Positions 5,288 through 62,862 of a stretch of DNA of 64,000 nt are shown piece by piece (positions within the stretch are counted from its first letter, which is position 1; every line of letters starts with the position of its first letter). The position numbers and the translations under genes are program-made. This stretch comes from Octopus sinensis (taxonomy: Eukaryota). The stretch is taken from the NCBI RefSeq assembly GCF_006345805.1, contig NC_043005.1, forward strand, positions 102,672,001-102,736,000. The letters are read 5' to 3'. The notes beneath the pieces were generated by a model. It worked only from the letters and a program-made list of their open reading frames with translations, did no database searches and was not told where the DNA came from.

Positions 5288-5307
5288 TATATATATATAT
5301 ATATATA

Positions 5308-5507: not shown

Positions 5508-5557
<50 letters not shown>

Positions 5558-5784
5558 ATATATATATATACTCTTTACTCTCTTACTTGTTTCAGTCATT
5601 TGACTGCGGCCATGCTGGAGTACCACCTTGATCGAGCAAATCGACACCAGGACTTATTCTTTGTTAGCCTAGTACTTATTCTATCGGTCTTTTTTGCCGA
5701 ACCACTAAGTTACGGGGACGTAAACACACCAACATCGGTTGACAAGCGTTGTGGCGGGGACAATCACAGACACACACACACACA

Positions 5785-5829
<45 letters not shown>
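5308..5829. repeat. Direct tandem duplication, 261-bp period
   Basis: GACTGCGGCC at 5341 and 5602. The non-microsatellite portion appears identical in both copies. Confidence 0.9.
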
Positions 5830-5837
<8 letters not shown>

Positions 5838-6007
5838 CATAAATACGATGGGCTTCTTTCAGTTTCCGTCTACCAAATCCCCTCACAAGGCTTTGGTCAG
5901 TCCAAGGCTATAGTAGAAGACACCTGCCCAAAGTTCCACGCAGTGGGACTGAACCCGGAACCATGTGGTTGGTAAGAAGCTACTTACCACACAGCCACTT
6001 CTACGCC
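5308..6007 (-). mobile_element. tRNA-derived SINE, family A, with duplicated 3' half
   Basis: Head GGCGTAGAAGTGGCTGTGTGGTAAG...GGTTCAGTCCCAC on the minus strand, internal (TA)n(TG)n, tail ...CAGCATGGCCGCAGTCAAATGACTGAAACAAGTAAGAGAGTA. Homologous to 14099-14526, 41597-42020 and 44140-44616. Confidence 0.9.
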
Positions 6008-6083
6008 TATATATATATATATACGAATGCTTCTAATTTATAACGAAATACGTATCTTCCTAAGGATACCAATAGCAGTTTAA

Positions 6084-11123: not shown

Positions 11124-11430
11124 GTGGAGGCGCAATGGCCCAGTGGTTAAGGCAACGGACTCGCGGTCGTAGGATCGCGGTTTCGATTCCCAGACCGGGC
11201 GTTGTGAGTGTTTATTGAGCGAAAACACCTAAAAGCTCCACAAAGCTCCGGCAGGGGGTGGTGATCCCTGCTGTACTCTTTCACCACTCTTTCTCCCACT
11301 CTTTCCTCTGTTGGCCTGCTCGCTTAGCCAGCGGGGTGGCGTCATTCGAAGGCTAAAACAATGCGAACGCATTGTGACCAGCGATGTGTAACTACATCTG
11401 ATAGACTGGTCGGTCACGTGATCACGTGAT
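11124..11430 (+). mobile_element. tRNA-derived SINE, family B, with TSD
   Basis: A box TGGCCCAGTGG, B-box-like GTTTCGATTCC, tail GGTCACGTGATCACGTGAT. 11-bp TSD ATATACCATAT at 11113-11123 and 11431-11441. Confidence 0.9.
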
Positions 11431-14098
11431 ATATACCATATTACTAGGTAAAATCTATAGAATATTTTATATTGTATATTTTGAATATTGAATATTTTAT
11501 ATTGTATATTTTATATTGTAGAGAACAAATTTGTGATGCTAATTTTTCAAAGACTATCTGTGTGCAAGATTACAAGATTTAGTGTAGATTCCTCTAAAGT
11601 GGTGACTTTCAGGAGGTTTGTTTTTGTCTTAGGAGGGTCATTGCACCAATAAAAAATAACACATGCACTGGTTCGATACACTCCTGTATTGTTAGTCTCT
11701 TGCTTAAATATATAACCAACTGTCTAATCGATCGTTCGTTTAATGTTCTGCGTAAACAATCGTTTGTTTGATTGTCAAAGTCCTTTCGTTACCTTATTAA
11801 TGACCTTTTAAAGGACTGCCTTCCGACTGTCCGTGAATTAGCCAAATGCCTACACGTATTTGCTGAGAAGGTAAAATTGAGAGTAAACGAGGATTTTCTG
11901 TGTATATGTGTGTGTATGAGTGTGCGTGTGTGAGTGTACACTCGTACTGTATGACTCTGTGTGTGAATGTGTGTGTGTGTGTGTGAATGTGTGTACATTA
12001 GGCATCCACGATCTCTTTAAGTGTTCGGCCTTTCCATTAAGGTCAGTTCTGTCACAGATCTGCTGTCATAGCGTAAGATTTACGGACGTAGTTCGTCATG
12101 CGGGTGGATTAGGGATAAGAGTAGCGAAGAACATAGTAGGCGTGTATGTGTGCAGGTGGACATTGTAGGTGTGCATTTGAACCTCCGCGCATGGTGTGTG
12201 TAGGTCTGTGCGCACACGCAAAAGTGGTCTAGAGTGCGTGTTTCTATGATTCAGCCAGTTATGACAATGATTTATGTGCTCGTATGTGTGTGCGTGTGTG
12301 TGTGGGTGTGTGAATTAGTGAGTATTTTCGTTCCAGTATGTGTGTGTGGGGGGGTGTGTGTGCATGCGGTGTGGTGGGCTATTTGAATAGGTAAGCATCT
12401 CTGTGTATGTCTACGTGTGTGCATTTTTATGCGTGTATGTATGGTGTATGTATGTGTGTGTTTCTGTATATATGTATTTGTGCTCCTATGCATCTGTATG
12501 TGTCTGTACAGGTGTACGCGTGTACGGGCGGTGTGTGCGTGCGTGGTTATGTGTATAGTTCTACTTTCGTATGTGTCTTTGTGTGTGCTTACGAGTACCT
12601 GTGTGGACATTAACGCCCGCTCGTGCGTAAAAAATATGTATAGTCGTATATTGGAATTATCCATAATTACACCAATTTATTTTTTGGGGATTTCCCCGTA
12701 TCCTGTTGTCATTCTAATCCTGCCCTATCTGTACCTACCTCTACCTGCGGGCCGTGCTCGTGCGCCTATGGGTGGATGTGTCTACTCGTGTATTGCAGTT
12801 GTGCATATATTACGTGTATTTATTTGAATGGATTTCTATTGTTCTAATCCTGCTCTATATACCTTTGCTTTTACCGTCACACACATGCCCAATTACCCAC
12901 ACGGACTCAACCCTCTATATCTGCATTGTGTCGTTGATAACAGTGGCATTGTAGGTCTAATAAATACTATATATACTTTCCGTTCGGTATTGGTATTGCA
13001 TCCCCCTAAACACACAAACACATACAAGAAGAACTACACTCGTAAATCCTAGCGGAATGACAAGCAAATTCCAGGAGATCTGAAACCAGACTAAACTTAA
13101 ACAAATGGTCAAACCGTTAAAGAGATCACTGATGGCTAAAGTACATACAAAACTACAGACACACATACAAGCAGTCGCACACGCGTGTGCACACGCACAT
13201 ACACACACGGAAACATACCCCCACAGAGACTCTTTGTTTGCTCTCACCCTTCCCTTCTCCTGTAAGCAAACACATATCACCGTACACACATACATGTATA
13301 TATACAGGGTCACAACACTAATTCTAAGACTGACTCAGTGCAGATCTTGACGAGAGGTGACAGATAAACAATCATCTGATTGTTTAACCAGTACATGAAG
13401 CAGACGACCGAATAGTTACGTGGTTATATATTTAACCAATTGACTAACAATAAAGAAGTGATATCGAACAAATTGGCGTGTTTATTATTAGCCGATGGCC
13501 CTCTCAAAACACTGGAAGGTTTCTTTCAACACAAATTCACATGAGTCTTGCAAATGAAATGTAAAAGTGAAGTATGCGAACACTAATTTATTAATAATTA
13601 TCTGATGAAGAAAATTCTTATGTTACAGCAAGTAAAGAAGACAATTTTGGACAGAATTCGATCATATCAAGTCAGTTTCCTCTTCAATAAAGTCTATGCT
13701 TTGTTCTATATATTAATTCAACAGACAGCGATATGGTCTACATACCTGGATAAGATCTTAGTTATATCGTATCAGAAAAAAAGATACCGGATAGTCATCA
13801 CAAAAATCATTTGATCGCATATCAGATAGAGCAGATTATAAACGACATCCAACCGTCTGAAAGTGTGTCTGTTTTTTAAGCATAATTTAGTAAGAACTTG
13901 TTTTGGTCTTGAAATGCAAATGAATTTACTAGACAATGGTGTTTGAGACATATTACTACAGATATTAGATTAATTCTGATAGTTTCAATGCTTCAGAACA
14001 TTTTATATAATTTCGTTTCCTTTAACTTTAAATCATTGATATATATTTCATAAATCGATGAGGATCAAAGCCGAAGATTATAAAACTTTACCTATATA

Positions 14099-14264
14099 GG
14101 CGCAGGAGTGGCTGTGTGGTAAGTAGCTTGCTTACCAACCACATTGTTCCGGGATTTATTCCCACTGCGTGGCACCTTGGGCAAGTGTCTCCTGCTATAG
14201 CCTCGGGCCGACCAAAGCCTTGTGAGTGGATTTGGTAGACGGAAACTGAAAGAAGCCCGTCGTA

Positions 14265-14323
<59 letters not shown>

Positions 14324-14526
14324 TTCTGTTTTTCTCCCCCAACATCGCTTGACAACCGATGCTGGTGTGTTTATGCCCCTGTAACTTAGCGGTTCGGCAA
14401 AAGAGACCGATAGAATATGTACTAGGCTTACAATGAATAAGTCCTGGAGTCGATTTTCTCGACTAAAAGCGGTGCTCCAGCATGGCCGCAGTCAAATGAC
14501 AGAAACAAGTAAAAGAGTAAAGAGTA
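14099..14526 (+). mobile_element. tRNA-derived SINE, family A (complete)
   Basis: GGCGCAGGAGTGGCTGTGTGGTAAG head, CCTTGGGCAAGTG (CORE-like start), internal (TA)n(TG)n, tail ending AAGAGTAAAGAGTA. Confidence 0.92.
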
Positions 14527-17211
14527 TATATGAATTTCTTTGATAAAAGACTTAATACTTCCTTTGTCTTAACATCCCCTCCAATTCGTTCGGTGTTTTT
14601 TACAGAATCCATTCTGTCACTAGTATTCTCCTCGAGTCTGAGACCTAATAATAGCTCAGTATTTTTATACTCTGCTTCCTACAACAGCAAGCCATGAATC
14701 ATGGATTTTCTGTCTTTTTATCCACCAATTCCCGACATCCCGCAGAGGAGGACATGAGAATTTCGCCTCCGCCTTTCAATACGCATCAAAACCAATTTAA
14801 ATTGATTTCAATTTTTGGCACAGGACCAGAAAGCTCATTGTAATTAAAATAGTATTCTAATTCAACAGGAAACCATTGTGAAAGATGTCTCCGAAGTAGC
14901 TTTTTCTTGGTGGGTAATAAAAGTAGAAATGTAATGAAATGCAATTTAGGCGTATATTTAAATCACATTAGGTTCACGTTTTGTTCAAAATTATTAAAGC
15001 ACGAACAAAAATATGGATTTTAGATATGACCGAAAATTAAAACTTTGACTATGAACTACTTCAACTGAATCGATTACCAATACTATTCTGGAAATCATTG
15101 CAACCTCTTGAAATGGATAACTGGCCAATATGGAACCTAGTTTGGAGATTTCAAGTCAAAATTTAGAGAGATGAAGATGAATGCTGAAAGATATTTAGAT
15201 TGATGATCTCTTGTTGTCTCGTTGTCTGTCACAATTTCTTGAATCAGCACTGAATGGAGGAGAAACATGACTAAAGGTGTTTCAACAGTGATAACACCAT
15301 CTTTGCCTGCGACGAAGAATCATCTATGCAATATCATTCTATTTCTAACCTTAGTAGATTGTGATTTGTGTGATTGGGTTGTTGTTTTCTGCAAGAAAAT
15401 GACCAGGTCACGTTTAATCAACATTCTTAACCCCATTCTAAAATGATCAAGTAAAAAAATGCAATATTGAATTTTAAGCAGCAGTTAAGAAGTGTTCATC
15501 ATTTCTAGATCGGAAACAGAAATCTGTGTTATTCTTAATAGTTCAGAAAAGTTCGGGGTCAAGTAGTGCCTTTCTAGGATTGAAACACATTCCATCATCG
15601 GTTTCTTTGAAGTTCATCTCTTGCTGAATTCATTTATCAAAAGTCATAAATCTTAAATTAAATACGTTTAAGAATTAAGGTTATGTGCATTGATACTTCA
15701 ATATATTTACTTACTTGTTTAGAAGTTGATGGAATATTCTAAATGCGTGATAGGAAATTGTGAATGTAAAGTTCTCTAACGACTTTTGCTGCGATAAAAA
15801 AGAAAAATCTCAAGAAAAAATAACATACATGAAAATATAGTTCATTGCTGTAAGCAACAGATTTCTGTTATAGAAGAATAAATGTGATTTTTCGAGGAAT
15901 GTTGGGAAGGAGTGAACATTCTCCGCCCAGAACTATGGAAATCTCACGAACTCTATAGAAATATGCTCATATTAATTTCATTTCATAAAGAAATTATTAT
16001 ATTGGCAATTGAATATTCTTCTAAAAGGTCATTGATTATTGGTACTAGATGGATAGGAGACGATGCTAATATATGAAAATGTTAACGTGATTAACGGAAA
16101 TTTATTAAAATAGGGTGTGTGTATGTGTATGTGTCTATGTGTCTATGTGTCTATGTGTGATGCAGTGTATAGGCTATGAATTAAATAAAACTAATATATT
16201 ATCGGTGAAAGTTCAAATCAATGCTCTTATTTTATTCGCCAATTCAAGCATCTACCTTAAATAGTAATTAAGTTAGCATTTACTAAACAGTTACAAGAAA
16301 TTTAAAGATACTACATGTTTGTTTCTTTTTCAAATAAATTATATTTTCCCATCACTCTGAGTGAGTTTTGTACAATAATTCTGAAATATTCTAGTTTCCT
16401 CACCTCGCAGTCACCGATATGAAAAAAATGTATCTGGGAAATCTTAAATCAGCTGCAACAATTACAATGGCGGCTTGTCGTTTCCGTTTCATTTATGAAA
16501 GCTGTGAATGCATTACAAATGCATTCATTATAAAAGGAAATGAGTTTTGAAAAGTTGTTCCCATTTTTTGTCAGCTTCAATGCAATATTTATAACACATC
16601 ACAAAAATTTGCTTCCCTGATATGATTAAAATATTATTTAGTAGTTGTTTTGCCTCTGAAGCAGTTTAAATTTCTAATGATACAATAAAAGGTTAGTTAA
16701 AATCCTTTGTTGTGTTGGAAACATGCTACACAGAGAAGTGTTTATTCTGAATATTTAATAACGACCACAAAATTACTATAAAAAGGAAGATCTTCGAAAA
16801 CACATTGTTTTTTTTTTTTACTTTGTTATGAATCAACGGAAATCTAAGGAATATTTCCTAAACAACACTTTTAGTGTATAATTAATAACTTACAACAAGT
16901 GTTTCTATCTTCATCTGGACTGCTAAGAAAGAACATTGATTTAGCATAATGATCCATCTTCCGTCAAATTTTACAGAGAATACATCGAATTTATGTTATA
17001 ATAATATTCACTGACATAAACAACTCGCAATAGGTTAACAAATCTAGAGTCATATATTTAAATGTAACATTTATCGCTACCGAGTTTATTCATAGTTAAT
17101 AGGGTGTATAACCTGGCATTGTTCATAAACTATGAAATATATATATATATATATATATTTATGTGTGTGTGTGTGTGAATGTGTACACATATATATATAT
17201 ATATGTATATA

Positions 17212-29012: not shown

Positions 29013-29652
29013 ATATATATATATATACATATATACACGCATATATTCATCTATGTTAGTATTGAAAAGTTAAGAATATTATATAGACCGGTTGGCACCG
29101 AGAATAGTTCCTTTGATAAAAGCAAAATCGCCTTTTAGGTAATCATTCGAAATTCTTTCAAAGACGGCGCCAGAAATACTAAATCTTGTCTTTATCGGTG
29201 ATTTTTCTTTGGAGACAGATGCAACATAAAATGGTGGAGCATTTTTAGATATTTATTTATTATTTTTATTCGAATCTAGGATAAAAACGACACCAAAACA
29301 CAAATAACAATGCAGTATGCACAAATAACAAATATATCACTATCTGTTATACACAACATCAACGTAACGGCAATCATCATAAGCAGAGGGAATAGTTGTA
29401 TCATATTCGAGACGAAGATACCGATCACAGAAACGAGTAGAAGAAGAAATAACATAAATAATATAAATGGTTTATACAGATAATGTTTATTAGGTGGCAA
29501 CTATTGGAAATCTTGTCGAGGTCATGATGAAAATCAAGAATCTTTTTGTTCTCATAGTTTTTAGTATTGTTTCTTTTTTTATCTTGTTCGGTAGAAGCAA
29601 TGGCAAAATATGTATTTCTCGCAGAAAGTAATATGAAGTTTTTTTGTTTGTC

Positions 29653-29712
<60 letters not shown>

Positions 29713-29959
29713 CTGTGTGTGTGTGTGTGTGCATATATATATATATATGCATATATATGTGTGTCCTTGTGTAGTTGTTCATGTGTGAATGTATTGTCTG
29801 CCTGCATGCGAGTGTAAATGTGTCAGTGAATGCCCATGCATATAAATGAACATATGTATATATATATATATATATTGTGAAAGAGAGAGAGAGGTGAAGG
29901 AGAGAGAGGGTAGAGAGAGGCAAATAGACGGACAACAGAGAAACAGACAGACTGACAAA

Positions 29960-30014
29960 GAGACAGACAGACAGATACATAGATTGATAGATAGATAGAC
30001 AGATAGATAGATAA

Positions 30015-30071
<57 letters not shown>

Positions 30072-30120
30072 CAGATAGATAGATAGATAGATAGACAGAT
30101 AGATAGATAGATAGATATAT

Positions 30121-30164
<44 letters not shown>

Positions 30165-30178
30165 TCAGACAGACAGAC

Positions 30179-30223
<45 letters not shown>

Positions 30224-30240
30224 AGAGAGAGATTAGATAG
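29960..30240. repeat. (GATA)n/(GA)n microsatellite
   Basis: Direct inspection. Confidence 0.95.
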
Positions 30241-31276
30241 ATTCATTCAGACGTACATGCATAGTGACTTCAAACAAAGATTCGCTCCATGTCGCTTCCT
30301 TAAACACATATGCATGTTTGTATGTACGTATGTATGAATGTATGTATATATGTATATATGTATCTCTCTGTCTATGTATGTATCCATCTATCTGTCTGTC
30401 AATCTATCCATCTATCTCTCGCTCTCTTTCTCTCTATATATATACATCTCACTCTCTCTATTAGTTTGTCTAACTATCTATCTCCTCATGTATCTATTCA
30501 CGTTTTAATCCGTGTGATACTCTCTTAGCTGCCTAACTAACCTATCACTAACCCTAATGTTCATATATCCACTGGTATCAACTCTAACATCACAATTCTC
30601 TCTCCGAAACCAAAACGAAACACAGCACCAAATTTGACCAAAATGGGAAAGGCCTTCAATTAAAATTAATCTTAATTCAGTTTGGGTTTCGCCCTACAAA
30701 AACCATTCCACAGCCCGCCAGCACTATGGTGACAAAGCTAATCGGAACCCAGTGCCATTTGACTTCCTCTGCTAACCACTCTGCCATTGAGGCATACACA
30801 CTAGTGTAGCCAGTTTCTGCAGTATAACAACACCAATATTTCTGGCTTCACATTTGCTCTCATTCAAAAGAGACAATAATTTCAGCAACTTTTTCTTCGG
30901 AAACCGTGTAGCAGGAAGGAATCTCAAACCAAGCCGAAAATATGCCAAGTATATCCTTACATTAATAACACTGCAGCTCCCACTGAAGTATATACCGCTA
31001 TCAAATCATTCATAAATTACGTATATGTTTGTGTGTGTGTGTGTGTGTGTATTCGTACCAGTGCGTGCACTCTCCCATTGCTATGCTTATCTTTAGAAAA
31101 GTGTAAGGTCAGGCTTATTCAGTTCCTACTTCTTGGATGTGGTAGCGAACATGTAATCAGAAGCTAACCAAAAGTAGAATTCTATACAGCTCATAAATAG
31201 ATACATAAATTACATGTGTGATGTTCGGTTAAATATCATTAGTGGTATCAAGTACACACACACTTGCAATGACTAT

Positions 31277-37563: not shown

Positions 37564-37749
37564 TTGCATGTCATGATATCAATAATCAGAACGGTGAGAT
37601 TGGAATATTGTTAACATGCCGGACGAAATGTTGAAACCGTATTTCTTCGGTAGGTGAGTGCATATTCTGTTGCAGATTTAATTTTAAACCTTGGGGGTCG
37701 ATAGAATATGGAGTAGTTGATCAACGTAACTGAATAACCCACTATCAGA

Positions 37750-39200
37750 AATCTTGGGTAGGCAGTGGTCTTTCATCCTGTCGACGTGCTCATCCCAACG
37801 CAGTTGTGTCTTAAGTAAAATGGCTTCTAGGCGGGTGACCTTTGCTTGCTCAAGTTTTGGTGATGTAGTCGCTCCAGTAAATGTTGAAGATGGTACGAAG
37901 GCAGCGATGGCGGAAAGGTTCGAGGAGCCTGAGATGATAGCATTAGGGGGCCCAGGACTCAGAGCCATACCGGAGCGTAATGGAAACGACGGCCCTGTAG
38001 ACGCTGACTTTTGTGTTGATCCTGTTGTTTCACATACACTTGTTAATCTGCCAAATGCTTTGTTTACCTTTGCAAGGCTGTTGTCAATTTCCTTGACGAT
38101 ACTCGCACCCAAGATAAATAAATTGCTGTTCCGACTTCAGTTGAGTTCTTTTTCAGCAATGGTCATGTGGGGAGGGATGCACTCTTCTTGGGGAGCTGGT
38201 TGGTGTAGGACTTCAGCCTTTTTCAAGCTTACTTCCAGTCCGAAATACTGATCGGCCTCTACGAAGCAGGATGTGATTCGCTGCTGCGCTCTTTCTGTGT
38301 GTGCGACAAGTGTGACATCATCTGCAAAGAGGATCCTGGATCAATTACTCTTGGATCTTGGTGTGGGCCTCTAGGCGCCGGAGGTTGAAAAGACCGCCTT
38401 CCAGACTGTATCTGATGTAAACGGTATCTTCAGCCTCGAGATCTGCAGTAACCTGCTTGAGCCTCATGCTGAAGAAAATTCTAAAAAGAGTTGGTGCCAG
38501 GATACAGTGCTGCTTCACACCGATGTTGATGAGGAATGGCTCTGATATGTCGCTGATCTTGTTGGTCATCGTGAAGCACGATGTTCATGGTTAGAAATTT
38601 TTGGGGCCGGCCGAGTTGGTTTAGGATCTGCCACAGACCTCACCTGCTCGGAGTATAGAATGATTTTGTCAGATCGACAAATGTTGCGTAAAGTGTTTTG
38701 TTTCCCTCTCGGTACTTTCTTGGAGATGTCTGAGAACGGAAACGATATTTGATGCGCCCCTGTTGGCTCTGAAACCACATTGGCTTTCTGTGAGGTGATT
38801 TTCGGCGATGGACAGAACACGTCTTTTGAGGAGTTATCTTGCTCGTACTTTTCCTACAAGGGAAAGCAGGGTGATCTCCCGGCCGTTTAAGCAGTCTGAC
38901 ATTTCCTCTTTGTTTTGCACAGTGTAATAATGACAGCATCGCGGAGATCGCATGGAAGCTTGTTCTGTTCCCAGCATGCAATCAGGGTCTCGTGGCGTTT
39001 AGCATGTAGGACAGGACTCCCATGCTGCTATATCTCTGGTGGTATGCAAACGACTCCTACTGCCTTTCTACTCTCCAGCCGACCTGTATCAAATGTGGTC
39101 TCTTACAAGTTTGAAGGCTCATCTAGTTCATTCTGACTGGCTGTTGCTGGATGTGGAGGACTGCGTTGTCCTGGACAACTCAGTTTGCACTGAAGAGGGC
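37750..39200 (-). mobile_element. RTE-clade LINE reverse-transcriptase fragment, decayed
   Basis: CWEQNKLPCDLRDAVIITL, LYATFVDLTK, GVKQHCILAPTLFRIFFSM, YIRYSLEGGLFNLRRLEAHTK, LFADD, KEIDNSLAKVNKAFGRL, LLKTQLRWDEHVDRMKDHCLPKI. Stops, frameshifts and deletions. Confidence 0.92.
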
Positions 39201-40517: not shown

Positions 40518-40859
40518 ATATATTTTGCTTCATGCTATATACAAACGTATGTTTTAAAATGGATGTTATTTTCCCTCTTGGACTACTAACGAAGACAGTG
40601 TCCAGGCACAAATGTTTTCCTTCGGCAATCATATACAATGTTGTACTTTAGTCTAACGATTATTTTATGACAACATCGACAAATAATCTGCAAATAATGA
40701 TTCCCTAATGTATCATAATAAGCGACGACTTGTTCACAGTTGGCATTTGAGTATTCCAAAATATTTACGATATTTTTCATTGCAAGTCACATTATTACAT
40801 CCAATCACTTTATTACCTATGTTAATTTTTTACCCATTTATTTTTAAGCGTAAGTATAT

Positions 40860-40914
40860 GTCCATCTATCTTTCTTTCTATCTATCTATCTACCTGTCTG
40901 TCTATCTATCTATC

Positions 40915-40976
<62 letters not shown>

Positions 40977-40990
40977 TTATTTGTTTATCT
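40860..40990. repeat. (ATCT)n microsatellite
   Basis: Direct inspection. Confidence 0.95.
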
Positions 40991-41145
40991 GTCTGTGCGT
41001 CCATCCATATCTATGTAGTGCACCACATTCATTCGTATTACTGTCTTTATGTGTGTGTTATGTGTTTGTGTGTGTGTACATTAATTCAGAAATAGCATAT
41101 AACTCAATATTAGGGTTTTTTTTTTTTTTTATATTTCGTTAAAGG

Positions 41146-41320: not shown

Positions 41321-41596
41321 GCAACGAGAAGGTAAATGTTTTTCATTTCCAAATTTATTCCTGTTCGAATTTTATCCGCTATTTTTGTGGTTCTATAATG
41401 TGTTGAATCTCACCCTAAGTGGATTCCTTATGTGTATAAATATGCACTATATCGTATAAATAATATATAGTCTTCATGACTAATTTTTTTGCACGTTAGA
41501 CCACTGGAAATGTAAATTTTGATTGAATATTTTAAATTTAATTAAATTCCATTTCCCTCTGATATGATTAAACATTATATATATATATATACATAT

Positions 41597-42020
41597 ACTC
41601 TTACTCATTTCTTGTTTAATTCATTTGACTGCGGCCATGCTGGAGCACCACCTTTAGTCTACCAAATCGACCCCAGGTTTTATTTTTTGTAAGCCTAGTA
41701 CCTATTCTATCGGTCTCTTTTACCGAACCGCTAAGTAACGGGGACATAAACACATTACCATCGGTTATCAAGTGATGTTGGGGGGACAAACACAGACGCA
41801 CGAACATACACACACACACATGTATATATATATATACATATAAATATATATATATATCCGACGGGCTTCTTTCAGATTCTGTCTACCAAATCCACTCACA
41901 AATCTTCACTCGGCCCGAGGCTATAATAGAATACACTTGCCCAAGTTGCCACGCAGAGGGACTGGACCGGGAACCATGTGGTTCGTAAGCAAGTAACTTA
42001 CCACACAGCCACTCCTACGC
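41597..42020 (-). mobile_element. SINE family A (complete)
   Basis: Collinear reverse complement of 14099-14526. Confidence 0.9.
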
Positions 42021-42036
42021 ATATGTATATATATAT

Positions 42037-42145
42037 TTCATTTCATCTAGTTTCATCTCACGAGCTGTGGCCATGGTGGGTCACCGCCATTCATATTTTA
42101 AAAATATGGAATGCTTCACGAATTTGCGTGTCACCTTTGCGCAGG
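42037..42145 (-). mobile_element. U6 snRNA 3' half fused to a CR1-type LINE 3' tail (chimeric retrocopy)
   Basis: Minus strand CCTGCGCAAAGGTGACACGCAAATTCGTGAAGCATTCCATATTTTT (U6), then AAAATATGA, then ATGGCGGTGACCCACCATGGCCACAGCTCGTGAGATGAAACTAGATGAAATGAAAT (matches 43040-43095). Candidate TSD ATATGTATATATATAT at 42021-42036 and 42148-42163. Confidence 0.8.
42100..42145 (-). ncRNA. U6: U6 snRNA 3' fragment (about nt 62-107), pseudogenic
   Basis: 46 nt matching canonical metazoan U6 CCTGCGCAAGGATGACACGCAAATTCGTGAAGCGTTCCATATTTTT with 3 substitutions. The 5' half, including ACAGAGA, is absent. Confidence 0.9.
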
Positions 42146-42163
42146 ATATATGTATATATATAT

Positions 42164-42264
<101 letters not shown>

Positions 42265-42589
42265 TCAAAGAGTAAGACAGAGAGAGGGAGATTCATCCCT
42301 GCATACATACATATTTTAAACTGTTTTGTACCCATTAGTCAATGCCATTCAAGGTTATGATTAGCTCTGTTAATGCAACATTATGATCGAAAGGTTTACT
42401 TAACATCATGCACATTCAGTCTTTTATTCCTTGGTAGGTTATTCTCAGATTACTTTATCTGACATGTATGCAGGCATTATAGTGTGGTTATAGGGAGATT
42501 TAGTGGCTATTCTATGAACTAAATGAAGCGATTTAGTTCCTCCATGTTTGTTCTTATCAATACTATTTTTTTTATTAAAACCGTACTAT

Positions 42590-43105
42590 ATAAGCTATTG
42601 GGAAAGACTCAAGAGATTGAGACTCTATTCCTTAGAGCGTAGGCGAGAAAGATATGCCATAATATACATCTGGAAGATCCTAGAAGGACTTGTCCCAAAC
42701 TTTGGCATCGAGAGTTACACAAATGCCAGAACTGGGCGCCACTGCATAGTGCCAAGGACTCCAAATTTGCCATCAGGATGTAGGACAGGATACTGTGATA
42801 GCCTGGGCTTCCGAGGCCCACAGCTCTTCAATATCCTTCCGAAGAACCTAAGAGACATGCATGGGGGGGGGGGCGCAGATGTCTTAAAAATGAAACTGGA
42901 TCTCTTCTTGTCAGGTATCCGAGATGAACCAACTTCACGGCAGGAGGTACAGATGAGGGCAGCTGCATCGAACTCTCTCATGCACCAAATGGCAATTGCT
43001 AAAAAGCACTCGTGAAGTAAAATCATGTAGCAACACCAAATGGCGGTGCCCCAGCATGGCCACAGCTTGTGAGCTGAAACTAGATAAATAAAAATAAATA
43101 AAAAT
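42590..43105 (+). mobile_element. 5'-truncated CR1-type LINE: ORF2 C-terminus plus 3' UTR
   Basis: YWERLKRLRLYSLERRRERYAIIYIWKILEGLVPNFGI...GFRGPQLFNILPKNLRDM...KMKLDLFLSGIRDEP...RAAASNSLMHQM, stop at 43015, short 3' UTR ending in (TAAAA/TAAA)n. The clade call rests on the LxSLExRR-type motif. Confidence 0.8.
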
Positions 43106-44139: not shown

Positions 44140-44344
44140 TACTCTTTTACTCTTTTACTCTTTTACTTGTTTCAGTCATTTGACTGCGGCCATGCTGGAG
44201 CACCGCCTTTAATCGAGCAACTCGACCCCGGGACTTATTTCTTTTTGTAAGCCCAGTACTTATTTTATCGGTCCCTTTTGCCGAACCGCTAAGTAACGGG
44301 GACATAAACACACCAGCATCGGTTGTCAAGCAATGCTAGGGGCA

Positions 44345-44409
<65 letters not shown>

Positions 44410-44616
44410 TATTATATATATATATAATATATATATATATATATACATATATACGATGTGCTTCTTTCAGTTTCCGTCTACCAAATCCACTCACAAGGCA
44501 TTGGTCAGCCCGGGGCTATAGCAGAAGACACTTCCCCAAGATGCCACGCAGTGGGACTGAAGCCGGAATCATGTGGTTGGTTAACAAACTACTTACCACA
44601 CAGCCACTCCTGCGCC
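44140..44616 (-). mobile_element. SINE family A (complete)
   Basis: Collinear with the other copies, with tail (TAAAAGAG)n and intact head GGCGCAGGAGTGGCTGTGTGG. Confidence 0.92.
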
Positions 44617-44834
44617 TATATATATATATATATATCGTAGAGGGATAAATTACAAGTTTGTGTATGTGTGACGACACCTGGTTCTTAAAGATCAAATATT
44701 CTTGGGAAAGCAAGCCAACTAAGCTGTAGTTCTTAATGTTGTTAAGGTAGTATTACCTGTGTTAACCGTAAAATGTACTGGATAATTTCAACAAACCACA
44801 AACATAAGCACAATCATATATACACATACACAGA

Positions 44835-44983
44835 TCATATCTATTTATGTATCTACCTATCTATCCATCTATCTATCTATCTATCTATCTATCTCTCTAT
44901 CTATCTATCTATCTATCTATCTATTTATTTATCTATCCATCTATCTATCTATCTATCTCTCTATCTATCTATCTATCTCTCTC

Positions 44984-45034
<51 letters not shown>

Positions 45035-45093
45035 GTCTATTTATTTATCTATCCATCTATCTATCTATCTATCTATCTATCTATATATCTATA

Positions 45094-45125
<32 letters not shown>

Positions 45126-45260
45126 CAGCTATCTATCTATCTATCCATATATCTATCTATCTATCTATCTATCTATCATCTATCTATCTATCTATATATA
45201 TATCTATATATCTATCTATCTATCTATCTATCTATCCAGCTATCTATCTATCTATCCATA

Positions 45261-45320
<60 letters not shown>

Positions 45321-45359
45321 CATCTATCTATCTATCTATCTGTCTGTCTGTCTGTCTAT

Positions 45360-45392
<33 letters not shown>

Positions 45393-45400
45393 CATCCATC

Positions 45401-45440
<40 letters not shown>

Positions 45441-45460
45441 CTCTCTCTCTCTCCCTCTCT

Positions 45461-45495
<35 letters not shown>

Positions 45496-45515
45496 TAGAT
45501 AGATAGATAGATAGA
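44835..45515. repeat. Long compound (ATCT)n/(CT)n/(AT)n/(GATA)n microsatellite
   Basis: Direct inspection; source of the two IYLS-repeat ORFs. Confidence 0.95.
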
Positions 45516-49263: not shown

Positions 49264-49794
49264 CGTGTGTCGATGGCGGTGGAGTTGGCGTCCATACTCA
49301 CACCTGCACCTGTGTTGCTTCTCCCCCTTCTTCCCTCCCTCGTGAAGCTGTGGGGAAGGGAGTGTAAGGAAATCAACGTCGTAAAGCGTTGTCAAGGAGA
49401 CCAGCATTCTTTTAGAACAACGACTTCATGGCTTGAAGACACCAAAACAGAAATGGCTAAGAAAGCCCGAAAGCAAATTCTACAGAATCGGGAAACACGC
49501 CACACAGGGAAGGACTCCCGTGCAAAGAATTTGCACAACCGAATGTTATAGTTGTTGCACAAATTTTACTTTAAAAATATTATCCAAACACAAACTTTTG
49601 AAGGCAATATTGTATGGCGATGGTACTTGTGAAGTATGGTAATGGATTTAGTAGCCAAAAGGAGAGAGCAGAGGCATAGTATTGTGGTGGTGGTGGTGGA
49701 GGCAGTGGTAGTAGCACGGTGGTGCTGGTAGTGGTGATGGTGGTCGTGGTCGTGGTGGTCGTCGTGTTTGTGGTGCTGGTGGTGGTGGTGGTGG

Positions 49795-49825
<31 letters not shown>

Positions 49826-50305
49826 GGGGGGTGATGGTAGTGGTGGTGGTCGTGGTGATGATGGTGGTCGTGGTCGTGGTCGTGGTGGTATTCGTGATGG
49901 TGGTGGTGATGGTCATGGGCGTAGTGGTGGTGGTGGTCATGGTGGTAGTGGTGATGGTGTTGGTCGTGGTGGTGGTGGCTGAAGCTGTCGTCTGGGTTCT
50001 TCCAATTTTTTCGTGTGTCGGTGGCGGCGTTGGCGTTCATGTTCGCACTTGCACCTGTGTAGCTCCTCCCCTTCTTCCCTCCCTCGTGAAGCTGTGGGGA
50101 AGGCAGGGTAGGGAAATCAACGTCGTAAAGCGTTGTCAAGGAGACCAGCCTTCTTTTAGAACAACGACTTCATGGCTTGAAGTCGCCAAAACAGAAATCG
50201 CTAAAAAAGCTGAAACAGATCCACAAAAACGGCAAAAACCGCCACACAGAGCAGGTTTCCTGTGCAAACAATTTGCACAACCGAATGTTTTAGTTGTTGC
50301 ACAAA
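49264..50305 (+). repeat. Two diverged direct copies of a ~300-bp segment (49264-49564, 50012-50305) separated by a (GTG)n tract
   Basis: Shared CGTGTGTCG..GGCG, CTTCTTCCCTCCCTCGTGAAGCTGTGGGGAAGG, GGAAATCAACGTCGTAAAGCGTTGTCAAGGAGACCAGC, TTTAGAACAACGACTTCATGGCTTGAAG and TTTGCACAACCGAATGTT.TAGTTGTTGCACAAAT. Confidence 0.88.
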
Positions 50306-50559
50306 TCTTTATATATAAAAGTGAAGTAGTGTGTCTGTCTCCTACGATTTAGATTCCTAACTACTCTCACATTTGCGGTGCAGTTTAACCAAAGCCGGGT
50401 ATCTTATAGTCGTGATTCATATCCAGCCCTTCTGGGTATTAGCGCGCGTCTACGATGAGTCTACGATTTTAAAAAGAAATTACCATCATTTTCTCCATTT
50501 TAATGTATTTTTTCGCTATTATATAAGGGAAGTAACTCTCTAAAAATATATACTGCTAG
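50306..50559 (+). mobile_element. Internally deleted non-autonomous Helitron
   Basis: A|TC start and CTGCTAG|T end. The second internal repeat and the 3' hairpin present in the 18420 copy are missing. Confidence 0.82.
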
Positions 50560-58685: not shown

Positions 58686-60611
58686 GGAAATGGACAAAAT
58701 GTACTAGTAGTACTAAAATGGTTTGAATTTATACCCCGAAGTCTTAACGAGGCTACTAGGGAAATCCAGGTGAGGTAGTGGCTGATATTTCCATTCTGAC
58801 GATGGAGGCCAGTACTACACTAATCTTTATATACATCAACTTCTTTCTGTCTCTCTTTATATATACGTATATATATGTGCTTGTGTGTGTGTGTAGTTAT
58901 ATAGGCATATATATGTGCGTGTGTTTGTATGTGTGTGTGTATATGTGTATATGTGTGTGTGGGTGCGTGGGTGTGTCTCTATGCGCACAACAACAATACA
59001 CGATAGACATACACATAGAACTTATTTTGAATTCACAAAGAATGGATGATGTACAGTTTAGCAGTCAAATATTCCATTTGCCCACAAACTATAATACTTC
59101 ATATTATAATGCATTATATTCTCCCCGCCAGACTGTTGCTAATTTCACAATCAGTGAGCAAGCCTTTCCTCCATCTTTCAAATTATTTTTTATTTAGCTT
59201 TTCTTTCGGTTTTCGATTTTTTTACGTTGTTACAGCTTTTCTATAGGTTGATGTTTTTTTTCTCTTTTGTAATATTTGGAAGTTTAAATAACGTTTTTAC
59301 TATATTGACATTTTAGTAAATGATAGGAAATGATTTGTCCGAACAATTCCAGCAGATTCATGGAAATTTCTGTAGATAAAATAGTTGGCTTTTATTAAAA
59401 TCCCAAGTACTTGCAAACAGTGACGCCAAATTCCGGATGCCAATAAAAGATGGACTAAAATAAAACGCATACACACAGCCACTCAAATATACACACATAC
59501 ACCCAAACTCACAAACACAAAGAATTCTTCATCATAGATTGCCAAAAGGAATGAAATAATGTTTTAGTTCGGTTTATTTAGACAGTACAATGCTGCCAAT
59601 GAGAAACACCATTTCTGTTGACAATTGTTATAACTACAACAGTAGAAATGGTTCGAAGGTGAGATTAAAGGAATTGCTTTTTTTATGAGGCACAGTAAAT
59701 TGGTTTAAAACGGTGAGTGTAAATATTGTGTAGCTGATTATTACAAAGGCCGTCAACTACACGAATACAACAATACATACATTATAAGTACATGCTCTAA
59801 AATGATTGGAATTTGCGTGTGTGTGTATGTGTGTGTATACATACATACATGTGTATGAATGTATATGTATGAATGCATATGTGTATGAATGTATATGTAG
59901 TTATTTATATGTGTGTGCATGCACATATGCGTGATTTGTGTGCTTGGATGAATAGGTTCGGTCTTGTTAATCTAATTAAATAATTTAATTGATGGTGGTC
60001 CGTTGTTTTATTTACTCTGATCATCACTAAACATAAAGAAACTAATGTATTTGATTTCAAAACTTGATACATGTTATGTGTCCTTTACATTCTTATTTAG
60101 TTTAATCATGATACGACTTCATGTTGTTTGTAGATATTCAAACCTCGTACAAATTACGATTTCATATGCAATTCTGGCGGAAATATAACTTAAGCGTTGC
60201 TGTCAAGACCTAATACCACGCTGATGGCAGAGCCCAATAATTAAAATCTTTCCTTGATGTTAAAGCCCTATAATCAAAGACTTTCCCGCCATGGCCATCC
60301 AATAAGTGAATTTTTAGTTATCTATGCATTAATACACGTCGTAATAGCTTGAATTATATTATCCAATAAGCGCTTTCCGTTTTTAACTCGTCAGAGTGTT
60401 GTTTGAAGGGAAGCGCGTCCTTCCGAGGATTTCCCGTCAGCTTTTTAAGACTCAAATGCTTTGGGCTCTGCAGTGTTACATTATCATGGTGTATACATTT
60501 GAAGTCATTTTGTTCCCTTGTTTTTCTCACAATCTCCACCATCTTTCATCATTGCTCAATTCATAGAAAAAGAAGTCTCTGTTATTATACATATGTTCAT
60601 AATTTCACTGT

Positions 60612-60612
60612 T

Positions 60613-60686
<74 letters not shown>

Positions 60687-60875
60687 GATGCTGCTGCTAC
60701 TGCTGCTGCTTCGGCTTCTACTGCTGCTGCTGCTACTACTAATACTACTGCTGCTGCTACTACTACTATTACTACTACTACTACCACCACCACCGCTACT
60801 ACTACTACTACTACTACTACTACCATTGCTGCTACTACTACTACTACTACAATACTACTACTACTACTACAACAA

Positions 60876-60907
<32 letters not shown>

Positions 60908-61030
60908 TTGCTGCTACTACTACTACTACTACAACAATACTACTACTATTACTACTACTACTACTACTACTACTACAATACTACTACTACTACTACTACA
61001 ATACTACTACTACTACTACTACTACTACAA

Positions 61031-61092
<62 letters not shown>
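60612..61092. repeat. (CTA)n/(CTG)n compound microsatellite
   Basis: Direct inspection; source of the poly-Leu/Thr/Tyr ORFs. Confidence 0.95.
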
Positions 61093-61103
<11 letters not shown>

Positions 61104-62862
61104 ACTGCTGTAGTAATATAATACATTGAAACTGTGCTGTATTTTTCTGCTTTATAGCACAGCCAAACTTCTTTCAACAGAGCTCCCATCAGATTTATTC
61201 GTCTTGACCATCCACGTTTTGTATATTCATCGATAAACAAGATACGAATTTTTGGCTATTTCAATACTATAAGGAGTTTTGCTGTTATTTAGGAAGTTCG
61301 ATAATCGATTTGAAATTTTCAACGTCTTTAGACTTATAGTCATACGAAACCATTGCCCTTTCAGGGAAGGAATATCATCGGTAGAGTTAAGTCAAGCAGA
61401 TACCTGCTACGTAATCCCTTAAAATAATTTCATTCCTAACTACACAGAACGTGGTTTTATGTATCATTAAGATCTTCTCTTCCGAGATGTGTGGTATCTT
61501 GGGAAATGTTCATTCGACTCTAATACTGTGTTGATCAGAACCTTGTGAATGAAATCTGGACGACGGAAAGGACGGCTTTGAAACTAGACAGAGAGAAACC
61601 AAACTTCTTTTGGGTGACATACTAAATAGAAAACTACTCGATACTTACGTAACTTTAGTAGACATGGCTATGTAGCAATCATTCTACATCTCTTTTCAGA
61701 ATACCTATCTCAATTTCCCTTCTTTCTTGAGTGTGGGGGCAAGGCCTCCAACATAGATCTTCTCTGAATAATTGGTAAAAATCGTTCATCAGTCTTCAGG
61801 AAATAACGTGTTTTTTACCACTTTGTACAACGTGTATTAAATTTTAATTGGGAAATGTAACGGGAATTAGAAATTGAAAATAAACAGCTACAATACGCCT
61901 TCCTAAGCAATACGCCTTCCTGTGTTCGCTAGTTGCTTCAGTAATGGCAGGCGCAAGTTCTAGTTCGTGTTTCAGCATTAGGGATTAAAAAATATGGTTA
62001 TTATCTAGATGGGATTTGAAGGATAATTAGCACTAATTGTTCGCAAATAAAATGACACCTAAATTTTGCATAGCCTTTTCCTTAAACCATTGTAATTATT
62101 AAATGACACGTTACTGCGTCTAAAACTTAAAATTGGTTCATGCTCTGACGTCCATTCTTTCACCAAGAGTATTTTCGCGTAAAAAGATTTTAAAAGGCAT
62201 CGGCCAAGAATCGAAATGTTGACGACTTCTCATCTCACAAGGAATATAATTTTCGCCACTTTAAGAAATAATTATGTTAGAACTATATAGGAAAAATGAG
62301 ACAATTTCTTCTTCGATATGTTAATTAACTAATTCATCACGTGAATTTTAAATCGATCTTTATTGTGTGTGATAATCAATCACCTAATTTTATGAACGGC
62401 TTAAAGTGAAAGTAAAAGTCATTGAACAAAGGAAATCGATATGTTACAACAAAGAAGAACATTAGTTGAGTTTCTAAAATATTGTTTTTGTGGGGAATAT
62501 CATACATAGCAATGTAAAATAATTAAACTAGTTTAGGTAACAAAGTGAGTTTATGCATTCATCAAAGATAGTCCTTGACCCGGTATAAGCCCTGCATTTC
62601 GGGAAAGTGGGATGCTTTAATGGGAATGCCATATTTTACCAAGTTCTATATCGATCGTTATTGTAAGCGATAATCAATCGTTTGCTTATGTGAACGGTGG
62701 CTAAAAGTGCAAGTAAGAGATCGATGAAAATAGATACGCTTGGAAATTAAAGAATGTTTGGGCCTTAAGAAAATGTATATTTGGTAGGAGTGTTGGAGTT
62801 AAATCTAGTCTACGTTGATCAACGTGTCGATTGAACACGGATGAATTCACACCTAAAAATTT

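What the first reader, a model, noticed from the sequence alone, without database searches (positions are those of the whole stretch)
42037..42145. U6 snRNA 3' half fused to a CR1-type LINE tail: a U6 chimera or U6-headed SINE outside the L1 system
Seen in sequence: 46 nt of U6 (3 substitutions) running to the U6 terminal U-tract, a 9-nt linker, then about 55 nt matching the 3' end of the CR1-type LINE at 43040-43095, flanked by a candidate low-complexity 16-bp TSD. Established knowledge: U6/L1 chimeric retrocopies occur in mammals, and U1/U2-derived SINEU elements occur in crocodilians. CR1-type LINEs recognise their own 3' tail stringently, so a U6 RNA carrying that tail could be mobilised repeatedly. 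Inference: if the junction recurs, this is a 5'-truncated member of a U6-derived SINE family rather than a one-off.
Basis: partly seen in the sequence, partly recalled or inferred. Interest (0 to 1): 0.78.

Follow-up and report, generated by a model that had tools for sequence, protein, structure and literature searches.

The report
U6 fragment fused to LINE tail
An octopus-type genome carries a dead retrocopy in which the last 46 bases of U6 spliceosomal RNA are joined to the 3' recognition tail of a CR1-like LINE; this by-product of LINE reverse transcription is already known from vertebrates, so it is a real but fairly ordinary find.

Summary
- 42145-42100 is U6 nt 62-107 (43/46 identical to human U6) and ends in U6's own T5.
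- 42099-42091 is a 9-nt stretch I could not assign.
- 42090-42037 is the 3' tail of the same LINE subfamily as the fragment at about 42580-43100 (43/47 identical).
- A 16-nt direct repeat flanks the composite, but it is (TA)-rich and weak as evidence.

The tail is a two-hairpin module supported by covariation. Six LINE subfamilies and the abundant local tRNA-SINE share it, and the chimera's LINE part starts exactly at its base.

The best reading is one retrotransposition event by a CR1/L2-group LINE. The reverse transcriptase copied the tail and then continued on mature U6 RNA, either by template switching or on a pre-ligated RNA. The product was 5'-truncated.

Doucet et al. 2015 describe this architecture for platypus L2: 40 chimeras, almost all a 5'-truncated U6 plus a short tail.

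The U6-headed SINE idea could not be tested, because no collection here holds this genome. This copy argues against it: it has no head, U6 has no reported internal promoter, and an intact Pol III terminator sits before the tail.

Verdict: a new member of a known kind. Interest 0.3.

The parts
42148..42163 (-). Upstream copy of the 16-nt direct repeat ATATATATATACATAT (candidate target-site duplication). It ends 2 nt before the U6 part and lies at the edge of a ~115-bp (TA)n microsatellite (42146-42262).
   Evidence: (longest common substring of the flanks) and the sequence. Low complexity: 19 occurrences of the 16-mer in the window.
42100..42145 (-). U6 snRNA nt 62-107 (3' half), 5'-truncated. 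It ends with the native T5 tract and differs from human U6 at 3 positions, one of them a CpG-to-CpA change.
   Evidence: Rfam RF00026, 34.9 bits, E 1e-6; 93.5% over 46 nt, E 2e-14.
42091..42099 (-). 9-nt junction stretch AAAATATGA of unassigned origin. It could be LINE 3' UTR of an unsampled subfamily, untemplated or filler bases, or an oligo(A) start on U6.
   Evidence: LINE subfamilies lose similarity immediately 5' of the tail module, so 9 nt cannot be assigned.
42037..42090 (-). LINE 3' tail: two-hairpin module (ATGGCGGTGACCCACCATGGCCA + CAGCTCGTGAGATG), then GAAAC, then the terminal short repeats TAGATGAAATGAA. Three of its four differences from the neighbouring LINE copy break stem pairs, which indicates decay.
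   Evidence: (LINE variant, not SINE variant).
42021..42036 (-). Downstream copy of the 16-nt direct repeat. It starts right after the tail end and abuts the head of the tRNA-derived SINE.
41591..42020 (-). Neighbouring tRNA-derived SINE (~430 bp) with an internal (TA)n(TG)n stretch. Its own tail is a diverged copy of the same two-hairpin module. It is a separate insertion, not part of the chimera.
   Evidence: four other copies in the window, 78-85% identical; 5' end GGCGYAGGAGTGG, always preceded by (TA)n.
42580..43100 (+). 5'-truncated copy of the partner LINE. It has the C-terminal ORF2 domain (protein homology from 42587, stop codon 43013-43015), a ~24-nt variable 3' UTR, the tail module at 43040-43081 and terminal A-rich repeats to about 43100. 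It is the closest available relative of the chimera's tail.
   Evidence: the domain is contiguous with RVT_1 in relatives; tblastn limits; fold.

Best explanation
This is a single-event chimeric retropseudogene made by the retrotransposition machinery of a CR1/L2-group ('stringent') LINE in an octopod genome.

Proposed steps:
1. The LINE endonuclease nicked a (TA)n-rich site.
2. Reverse transcription was primed on the 3' end of a LINE RNA and copied the roughly 54-63 nt of tail that the enzyme recognises: terminal short repeats, GAAAC and two hairpins.
3. The enzyme then left the LINE template and continued at the very 3' end of a mature U6 snRNA (UUUUU). I favour template switching, but a U6-LINE RNA joined by ligation before reverse transcription would give the same DNA.
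4. It stopped, or the 5' end was joined, after 46 nt of U6.

The product has no promoter and has been decaying since insertion. It is a by-product, not a working SINE copy.

Shown:
- the parts, their order, orientation and exact boundaries;
- the native U6 3' end;
- the structured, co-varying tail shared by the LINE and the local SINE;
- the (TA)n target context shared with the local SINEs.

Inferred: the single event, the template switch, and the order of events relative to the adjacent SINE.
For: (a) Architecture.
- Sense U6 lies 5' of the extreme 3' end of a LINE, 9 nt apart.
- U6 ends at its natural T5.

(b) Tail source.
- The tail follows the LINE variant (CCACAGCTyGTGAGmTGAAACTAGAT), not the tRNA-SINE variant.
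- It belongs to the subfamily of the LINE copy 1 kb away (91.5% identity).

(c) Boundary of the LINE part.
- It begins at the base of a two-hairpin module conserved in six LINE subfamily tails and in the SINE.
- Covariation: 6 of 13 pairs have changes on both sides; 88.5% of cells pair, against 20-40% when partners are slid; 0/500 shuffles reach the observed score.
- This is the minimal unit a stringent reverse transcriptase would need.

(d) Flanks and target context.
- A 16-nt direct repeat flanks the composite at offsets of 0 and 2 nt.
- All four full-length SINE copies are also preceded by (TA)n, so the target context is the same.

(e) Precedent (PMC4476161).
- Platypus has 40 U6-L2 chimeras, almost all a 5'-truncated U6 upstream of a short L2 tail.
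- Chimeras are the only U6 retrocopy type made by stringent LINEs.

(f) Decay.
- U6 differs at 3/46 positions, one a CpG transition.
- The tail differs at 4/47, and 3 of these break stem pairs.
Against: - The flanking repeat is low-complexity, with about a 7% chance of a 12-nt-or-longer match in TA-microsatellite context. So a single event is not proven.
- The 9-nt linker is unexplained.
- Only one copy could be examined, so independent recurrence or family membership is unknown.
- The octopus U6 gene was not available, so the three 'substitutions' could partly be lineage-specific U6 sequence.
- The LINE clade (CR1 or L2) rests on a C-terminal motif I recall from memory and on tail architecture, not on a reverse-transcriptase phylogeny.
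Confidence: 0.72

Rival explanations
1. It is a 5'-truncated member of a U6-headed SINE family (SINEU-like). Such a family would be repeatedly mobilised by the CR1-like LINE through the shared tail, from one or more master copies with a full U6 head.
For: - The chimera carries the complete recognition module that the successful tRNA-SINE also carries.
- snRNA-headed SINEs exist: U1/U2 SINEU (PMC4494074).
- A curated O. vulgaris repeat annotation lists SINE classes 'U' (1 family, 369 kb) and 'U-L1' (1 family, 53 kb; 2 recent insertions averaging about 176 bp). It does not say which snRNA (PMC13282606).
- One copy turned up in a single 64-kb window.
Against: - U6's intact T5 Pol III terminator lies between head and tail, so a Pol III transcript would end before the tail.
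- The local Pol III SINE avoids T>=4 in 4 of 5 copies, although 82-96% of composition-matched shuffles contain such a run.
- No internal promoter is reported for snRNA genes (PMC4494074), and this copy lacks the 5' 61 nt.
- Platypus shows that dozens of look-alike chimeras arise independently without being a family.
- A partner LINE with the same 3' end is present, which by Kojima's criterion favours independent chimeras.
- No second U6 fragment was found in the window or in 89 kb of related loci, though this test has little power.
Confidence: 0.12
2. The outcome is the same (a single-event chimera), but the junction was made at the RNA level. An RtcB-type ligase joined the 2',3'-cyclic-phosphate 3' end of U6 to a 5'-OH fragment of LINE RNA. 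The chimeric RNA, which carries the LINE tail, was then reverse-transcribed in one pass. This differs from the best explanation only in one step.
For: - The mechanism is established for human U6/L1 chimeras (Moldovan et al. 2019, as cited in PMC11838501).
- U6 ends exactly at its mature U-tract.
- The 9-nt linker could simply be LINE 3' UTR of the source subfamily. The neighbouring LINE has AAAATCATGTA 12 nt upstream of the module, so no untemplated bases would be needed.
Against: - Nothing in the DNA separates ligation from template switching.
- The linker does not match any of the six sampled LINE 3' UTRs.
- Ligation has not been shown outside L1 and human cells.
Confidence: 0.2
3. There were two unrelated events: a severely 5'-truncated LINE (or tail-only) insertion landed by chance next to a pre-existing U6 fragment or decayed U6 gene. 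Alternatively, the arrangement arose by local rearrangement within the microsatellite.
For: - The region is a dense pile of insertions into (TA)n: a SINE abuts the element and a LINE fragment lies 400 bp away.
- The TSD evidence is weak.
Against: - There is only one U6 match and only two LINE-variant tails in 64 kb. Even so, they sit 9 nt apart, in the same orientation, with U6 ending at its native 3' end.
- A stringent LINE system has no route to a tail-less U6 retrocopy.
- No 5' half of U6 is present.
- No separate direct repeats bracket either part.
Confidence: 0.06

Closest known systems
U6-L2 chimeric retropseudogenes of platypus, and the U6-L2 / U6-RTE / U6-AnolisSINE2 chimeras of Anolis (Doucet et al. 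2015, PMC4476161)
   Same: - Sense U6 ends at its U-tract and is fused to a short extreme-3' fragment of a stringent LINE.
- U6 is usually 5'-truncated.
- The LINE ends in short tandem repeats, not poly(A).
- The composite is flanked by direct repeats.
- No tail-less or poly(A) U6 retrocopies are expected.
   Different: - The host is a cephalopod mollusc, not a vertebrate.
- The partner is a different LINE family (CR1/L2 group, two-hairpin tail).
- The candidate TSD is 16 nt, against 1-9 bp in platypus.
- A 9-nt unassigned linker is present.
U6/L1 chimeras of mammals (Buzdin 2002; Garcia-Perez 2007; Moldovan 2019)
   Same: - U6 lies 5', in sense orientation, joined at its mature 3' end to a 5'-truncated LINE 3' end.
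- It is made in one TPRT event.
- The two candidate mechanisms, template switch and RNA ligation, are the same.
   Different: - In L1 chimeras U6 is almost always full length and the L1 part ends in poly(A).
- L1 is a 'relaxed' LINE.
- Here U6 is cut to 46 nt and the LINE part is a structured recognition tail.
SINEU (U1/U2 snRNA-headed SINEs of crocodilians; Kojima 2015, PMC4494074)
   Same: An snRNA-derived 5' part is joined to a 3' part used for mobilisation by a non-LTR retrotransposon. Template switching onto an snRNA is the proposed origin.
   Different: - SINEU are demonstrated families, with shared internal deletions, subfamilies and master copies with 5' extensions, and with no LINE family sharing the SINEU-1 3' end.
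- Here there is a single truncated copy, U6 rather than U1/U2, a partner LINE with the same tail is present, and a Pol III terminator sits inside.
The local tRNA-derived octopus SINE and its partner LINE (common-tail SINE/LINE pair in the sense of Ohshima and Okada)
   Same: The U6 chimera carries the same LINE-derived two-hairpin module, starting at the same position, and sits in the same (TA)n target context as the SINE copies.
   Different: The SINE has a tRNA head and no T>=4 runs, and it is abundant (5 copies in 64 kb). Its tail is a diverged variant (CCGCAGTCAAATGACTG), not the LINE variant carried by the chimera.

Membership tests
U6/LINE chimeric retrocopy (template-switch class) | U6 sequence in sense orientation immediately 5' of a LINE 3'-terminal fragment | tested here: met
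   U6 nt 62-107, 9 nt, then the LINE tail, all on the minus strand.
U6/LINE chimeric retrocopy (template-switch class) | The U6 part ends at the mature 3' end (U-tract), not internally | tested here: met
   the alignment runs to model position 105/105 and human nt 107, ending TTTTT.
U6/LINE chimeric retrocopy (template-switch class) | The LINE part reaches the extreme 3' end of the LINE (the site where TPRT is primed) | tested here: met
   hairpins, GAAAC and terminal short repeats are all present, and the match to the LINE copy runs to its end.
U6/LINE chimeric retrocopy (template-switch class) | One target-site duplication brackets the whole composite | tested here: inconclusive
   a 16-nt direct repeat lies at offsets 0 and 2 nt, but it is (TA)-rich. 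The background rate is about 7% in TA-microsatellite context.
U6/LINE chimeric retrocopy (template-switch class) | Empty orthologous or allelic site showing that both parts arrived together | not testable with these tools
   No cephalopod genome is searchable by DNA. Control scans for the LINE tail were empty.
SINE family with U6 head (SINEU-like) | Many copies sharing the same head-tail junction and diagnostic mutations | not testable with these tools
   The junction pattern gave 0 hits, but the controls also gave 0. The junction peptides gave no candidates. There was no second U6 hit in the window or in 89 kb of loci, which has low power.
SINE family with U6 head (SINEU-like) | Head able to drive its own transcription (intact 5' end or internal promoter) | tested here: not met
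   This copy lacks U6 nt 1-61. No internal promoter has been reported for snRNA genes (PMC4494074).
SINE family with U6 head (SINEU-like) | No Pol III terminator between head and LINE-derived tail | tested here: not met
   T5 at element position 42-46, directly 5' of the tail. The local tRNA-SINE has no T>=4 in 4 of 5 copies, although 82-96% of shuffles contain one.
SINE family with U6 head (SINEU-like) | 3' tail shared with a partner LINE | tested here: met
CR1-clade LINE (partner element) | ORF2 with a reverse transcriptase followed by the CR1/L2-type C-terminal domain (…LEYCxQxWSP…LSLExRRxR…YKIL…) | tested here: inconclusive
   - The window ORF has YSLERRRERYAIIYIWKILEG.
- The domain is contiguous with PF00078 RVT_1 in relatives.
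- That the motif is CR1/L2-specific is my recollection, not a test; it does not separate CR1 from L2.
- The O. vulgaris annotation lists CR1 but no L2.
CR1-clade LINE (partner element) | 3' end with a hairpin structure plus short tandem repeats and no poly(A) (stringent type) | tested here: met
   One search shows the Argonauta copy ending in (CATTAAAA)n.
CR1-clade LINE (partner element) | Placement of the RT domain within the CR1 clade in a non-LTR phylogeny | not tested
   No reference set of clade-labelled RT sequences is available in these tools.
Functional U6 snRNA gene | Full-length ~107-nt U6 reaching the Rfam gathering score | tested here: not met
   no hit at the gathering threshold; 34.9 bits against 44. 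The 5' half is replaced by (TA)n.

The most novel reading that the evidence does not exclude
The copy is a truncated member of a genuine U6-derived SINE family of octopuses, mobilised through the CR1-like two-hairpin tail. That family may be what the O. vulgaris repeat annotation labels SINE 'U' or 'U-L1'. It would be the first SINE with a U6 head, and its masters would have to be transcribed past, or despite, U6's own terminator.
Probability: 0.12. Interest if true: 0.6.

Novelty: new member of a known kind. Interest (0 to 1): 0.3.

Why it matters
- It extends U6/LINE chimera formation, known from L1, L2 and RTE in vertebrates, to a CR1/L2-group LINE in a cephalopod. Doucet et al. could not settle a CR1-like case in turkey.
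- This supports the view that capture of U6 during LINE reverse transcription is an ancient, general property of non-LTR retrotransposons.
- It also shows the event thought to create new SINEs: a small Pol III RNA acquires exactly the minimal structured tail that the local tRNA-SINE also carries.
- In practice, such chimeras could date CR1-like LINE activity in octopus genomes.
- The two-hairpin tail defined here is a usable signature for pairing octopus SINEs with their LINE partner.
- The locus itself has no likely cellular function.

Tried and rejected
(1) Junction recurrence by DNA pattern.
- AAATTCGTGAAGCNTTCCATATTTTT-N(0-30)-ATGGCGGTG gave 0 hits in metagenome contigs and genome contigs.
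- Tail-only control patterns also gave 0 there and in viral contigs.
- So these collections hold no DNA of this LINE family, and the negatives mean nothing.

(2) Junction recurrence through predicted proteins.
- Three junction-spanning reading frames gave no candidate in the 5.8-billion-protein collection.
- The window's own small ORFs are evidently absent too, so this is also uninformative.

(3) Sampling related genomes.
- Ten look-ups yielded 89 kb. Only about 42 kb is octopod (O. vulgaris L003, Argonauta hians L007).
- No U6 fragment was found. There is no power for anything rarer than about 1 copy per 50 kb.

(4) Origin of the 9-nt linker. It is not matched in the six sampled LINE 3' UTRs, and the UTRs diverge immediately 5' of the module.

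(5) Shared 8-mer TCGTGAAG in U6 and in the LINE at 43011-43018. I considered it as a microhomology or recombination point and rejected it. The flanks are not similar by my manual comparison, the observed junction is elsewhere, and I estimate about a 7% chance of such a match.

(6) Triple chimera with the downstream tRNA-SINE, or twin priming with the head-to-head LINE fragment. Neither is supported. The SINE has its own normal 5' end preceded by (TA)n, like the other copies. About 400 bp separate the chimera from the LINE fragment, and I found no LINE homology in them.

(7) Clade assignment from Pfam or source names. Pfam gave no hit for the C-terminal domain, and no source name was informative.

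Full report
**What is there**

The element reads on the minus strand. From 5' to 3':
- a ~115-bp (TA)n microsatellite, 42262-42146;
- 46 nt identical at 43 positions to human U6 nt 62-107, ending in U6's own TTTTT, 42145-42100;
- nine bases AAAATATGA, 42099-42091;
- 54 nt, 42090-42037, matching the 3' end of the LINE fragment that ends near 43100 on the plus strand;
- then, after a 16-nt TA-rich stretch, the head of a tRNA-derived SINE (42020-41591).

Rfam's U6 model aligns the 46 nt to model positions about 60-105 with near-certain posterior probability. It scores 34.9 bits (E 1e-6), below the gathering score of 44, because the 5' half is missing and replaced by (TA)n. At the gathering threshold the window has no RNA-family hit at all. 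BLAST finds no other U6 fragment in the window.

A 28-nt tail pattern with up to 3 mismatches hits only the chimera and the LINE copy, with zero hits expected from shuffles. The two tails are 91.5% identical over 47 nt.

**The flanking repeat**

The 16-mer ATATATATATACATAT lies directly after the tail end (42021-42036) and 2 nt before the U6 part (42148-42163). It is low-complexity:
- The 16-mer occurs 19 times in the window.
- Flank matches of 12 nt or more at this spacing occur at 1.0% of all positions.
- They occur at 7.3% of positions whose left flank looks like a TA microsatellite.

I treat it as compatible with a target-site duplication, not as proof.

**Host and partner LINE**

The window has 34.7% G+C and is full of microsatellites.

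The ORF at 42548-43015 has protein homology from 42587. Its closest relatives include a predicted protein on an Octopus vulgaris chromosome (P0009), found with the ORF alone, and one from the octopod Argonauta hians (P0121), found with a profile of the domain. The tRNA-SINE head is found at 77-80% identity in both of those loci. So the window comes from an octopod genome; I did not determine the species.

In many relatives this C-terminal domain directly follows a Pfam RVT_1 reverse-transcriptase domain. It contains YSLERRRERYAIIYIWKILEG. From my own knowledge, this motif is the signature C-terminal region of CR1/L2-group ORF2 proteins. That is a lead, not a test.

The curated O. vulgaris repeat annotation lists CR1 (62 Mb) and no L2 (PMC13282606). 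I therefore call the partner 'CR1-like (CR1/L2 group)', with the clade not formally resolved.

**The tail is a structured recognition module**

I recovered tails from six LINE subfamilies (window, L001, L002, L004, L005, L006), an Argonauta copy (L007) and the tRNA-SINE copies. All share UGGC.GUGC-loop-GCAU.GCCA followed at once by CAGCU-loop-AGCUG, then GAAAC and a few short tandem repeats, with no poly(A).

The arms co-vary:
- CAGCU/AGCUG, CAGCC/GGCUG and CAGUC/GACUG in the second hairpin;
- UGGC/GCCA, UGGU/ACCA and GGGC/GCCU in the first.

On a 12-sequence alignment:
- 88.5% of cells pair, against 20-40% when partners are slid by 1-3 columns.
- 6 of 13 pairs show changes on both sides.
- No shuffle out of 500 reaches the observed covariation score.

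Similarity among LINE subfamilies stops immediately 5' of this module. This is the signature of a 'stringent' LINE whose enzyme recognises its own 3' structure, and the abundant local SINE has borrowed the same module.

Two points matter for the finding:
- The chimera's tail follows the LINE variant, down to the post-hairpin GAAACTAGAT shared only with the neighbouring LINE copy. It does not follow the SINE variant.
- Its LINE-derived part begins exactly at the base of hairpin 1, the same boundary as in the tRNA-SINE.

Three of the four differences from the LINE copy break stem pairs, as expected for a dead copy drifting.

**How it most likely arose**

The architecture has these features:
- sense U6 ending at its mature U-tract;
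- joined to the extreme 3' end of a LINE;
- bracketed by one direct repeat;
- in the (TA)n context that also precedes all four full-length SINE copies in the window.

This is the architecture of U6/LINE chimeric retrocopies. Doucet et al. 2015 (PMC4476161) found 40 U6-L2 chimeras in platypus, 'almost all' with a 5'-truncated U6 upstream of a short L2 sequence. They also found U6 chimeras with L1, L2, RTE and AnolisSINE2 in Anolis, and one unresolved 5'-truncated U6 next to a CR1-like element in turkey. They concluded that stringent LINEs make only chimeras, by template switching.

I therefore read this locus as one target-primed reverse-transcription event. The enzyme copied the tail of a LINE RNA, switched to the 3' end of U6 snRNA, and the copy ended after 46 nt.

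A variant is equally compatible with the DNA: U6 and a LINE RNA fragment were ligated before reverse transcription. This is shown for human U6/L1 (cited in PMC11838501). The nine junction bases cannot be assigned. They could be 3' UTR of an unsampled LINE subfamily, added bases, or an oligo(A) start.

**Is it a U6-headed SINE?**

I could not run the decisive test, which is how many U6 hits in this genome carry this tail and whether the junction is identical.
- The junction pattern gave no hit in the metagenome or prokaryote-genome collections. Tail-only controls were also empty there and in the viral collection.
- The junction-spanning peptides had no candidate in the protein collection.
- Only about 42 kb of additional octopod DNA could be fetched, with no U6 fragment in it.

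These negatives carry no weight.

What the copy itself says is against a working SINE:
- It lacks U6 nt 1-61.
- No internal promoter is reported for snRNA genes (PMC4494074).
- U6's T5 terminator is intact between head and tail, so a Pol III transcript from a U6 promoter would stop before the tail.

As an internal control, the local tRNA-SINE has no sense-strand T>=4 run in 4 of 5 copies. By comparison, 82-96% of composition-matched shuffles contain one.

By Kojima's criteria, the presence of a LINE with the same 3' end favours independent chimeras. The platypus case shows that recurrence of 'U6 + tail' alone would not prove a family.

In favour of the SINE reading: the chimera carries the full recognition module. 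Also, a 2026 O. vulgaris annotation lists SINE classes 'U' (369 kb, one family) and 'U-L1' (53 kb, one family, recent insertions averaging about 176 bp) without saying which snRNA they derive from. I put the SINE-family reading at about 0.12.

**Comparison and novelty**

The kind of element is known: U6/L1 since 2002, and U6 with L2 and RTE since 2015. My literature searches found no report of U6 chimeras or U6-derived SINEs in cephalopods or other molluscs. A clean CR1-like example was left open in birds.

So this is a new member of a known kind. It is a useful illustration of how a Pol III RNA acquires a stringent LINE's minimal tail, but it would not surprise a specialist. Interest 0.3.

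Noticed in passing
window 41591-42020 (-), 14093-14529 (+), 5566-6018 (-), 44152-44627 (-), 5305-5570 (-): Five copies of a ~440-bp tRNA-derived SINE with an internal (TA)n(TG)n stretch, 78-85% identical to each other. Every full-length copy is preceded by (TA)n, which suggests a (TA)n target preference of the partner LINE. The sense strand avoids T>=4 runs in 4 of 5 copies.
   Followed up: partly
window 43040-43081 (+); L001 551-595; L002 1213-1258; L004 ~735-775; L005 ~530-580; L006 ~937-980; L007 ~11303-11350: The LINE/SINE common tail is a two-hairpin module followed by GAAAC and short tandem repeats. It has clear compensatory changes across subfamilies and across octopod genera (Octopus, Argonauta). 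It is a usable signature for pairing octopus SINEs with their LINE.
   Followed up: yes
window 43011-43018 (+) and 42114-42121 (-): The 8-mer TCGTGAAG occurs both at the end of the LINE ORF (spanning its stop codon) and inside the U6 fragment. The flanks are unrelated and I estimate about a 7% chance of such a match, so it is probably coincidence.
   Followed up: partly
window 7609-8142 (+): An ORF fragment matches the C-terminal part of a piggyBac-type transposase (Pfam DDE_Tnp_1_7, E 3e-13). It is a DNA-transposon remnant.
   Followed up: partly
window 37684-38981 (-): Several overlapping ORF fragments look like another decayed retrotransposon, but Pfam gave no hit, so it remains unclassified.
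   Followed up: partly
window 29579-30246, 40708-41142, 44773-45498, 49648-50352, 60403-61113: Long repetitive, low-complexity stretches translate into spurious ORFs of 130-240 aa ('YLSIYLSI', poly-H/P, poly-L/T). They are not genes.
   Followed up: no
protein P0004: A 94-aa fragment 75% identical to the octopod LINE C-terminal domain is deposited as 'hypothetical protein, partial [Escherichia coli]'. This is most likely cephalopod DNA contamination in a bacterial assembly. No encoding contig was on record.
   Followed up: partly
PMC13282606, Table 1 and supplementary table: The curated O. vulgaris repeat annotation lists SINE classes 'U' and 'U-L1' with no discussion. Which snRNA and which tail they contain should be checked against this element.
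   Followed up: partly
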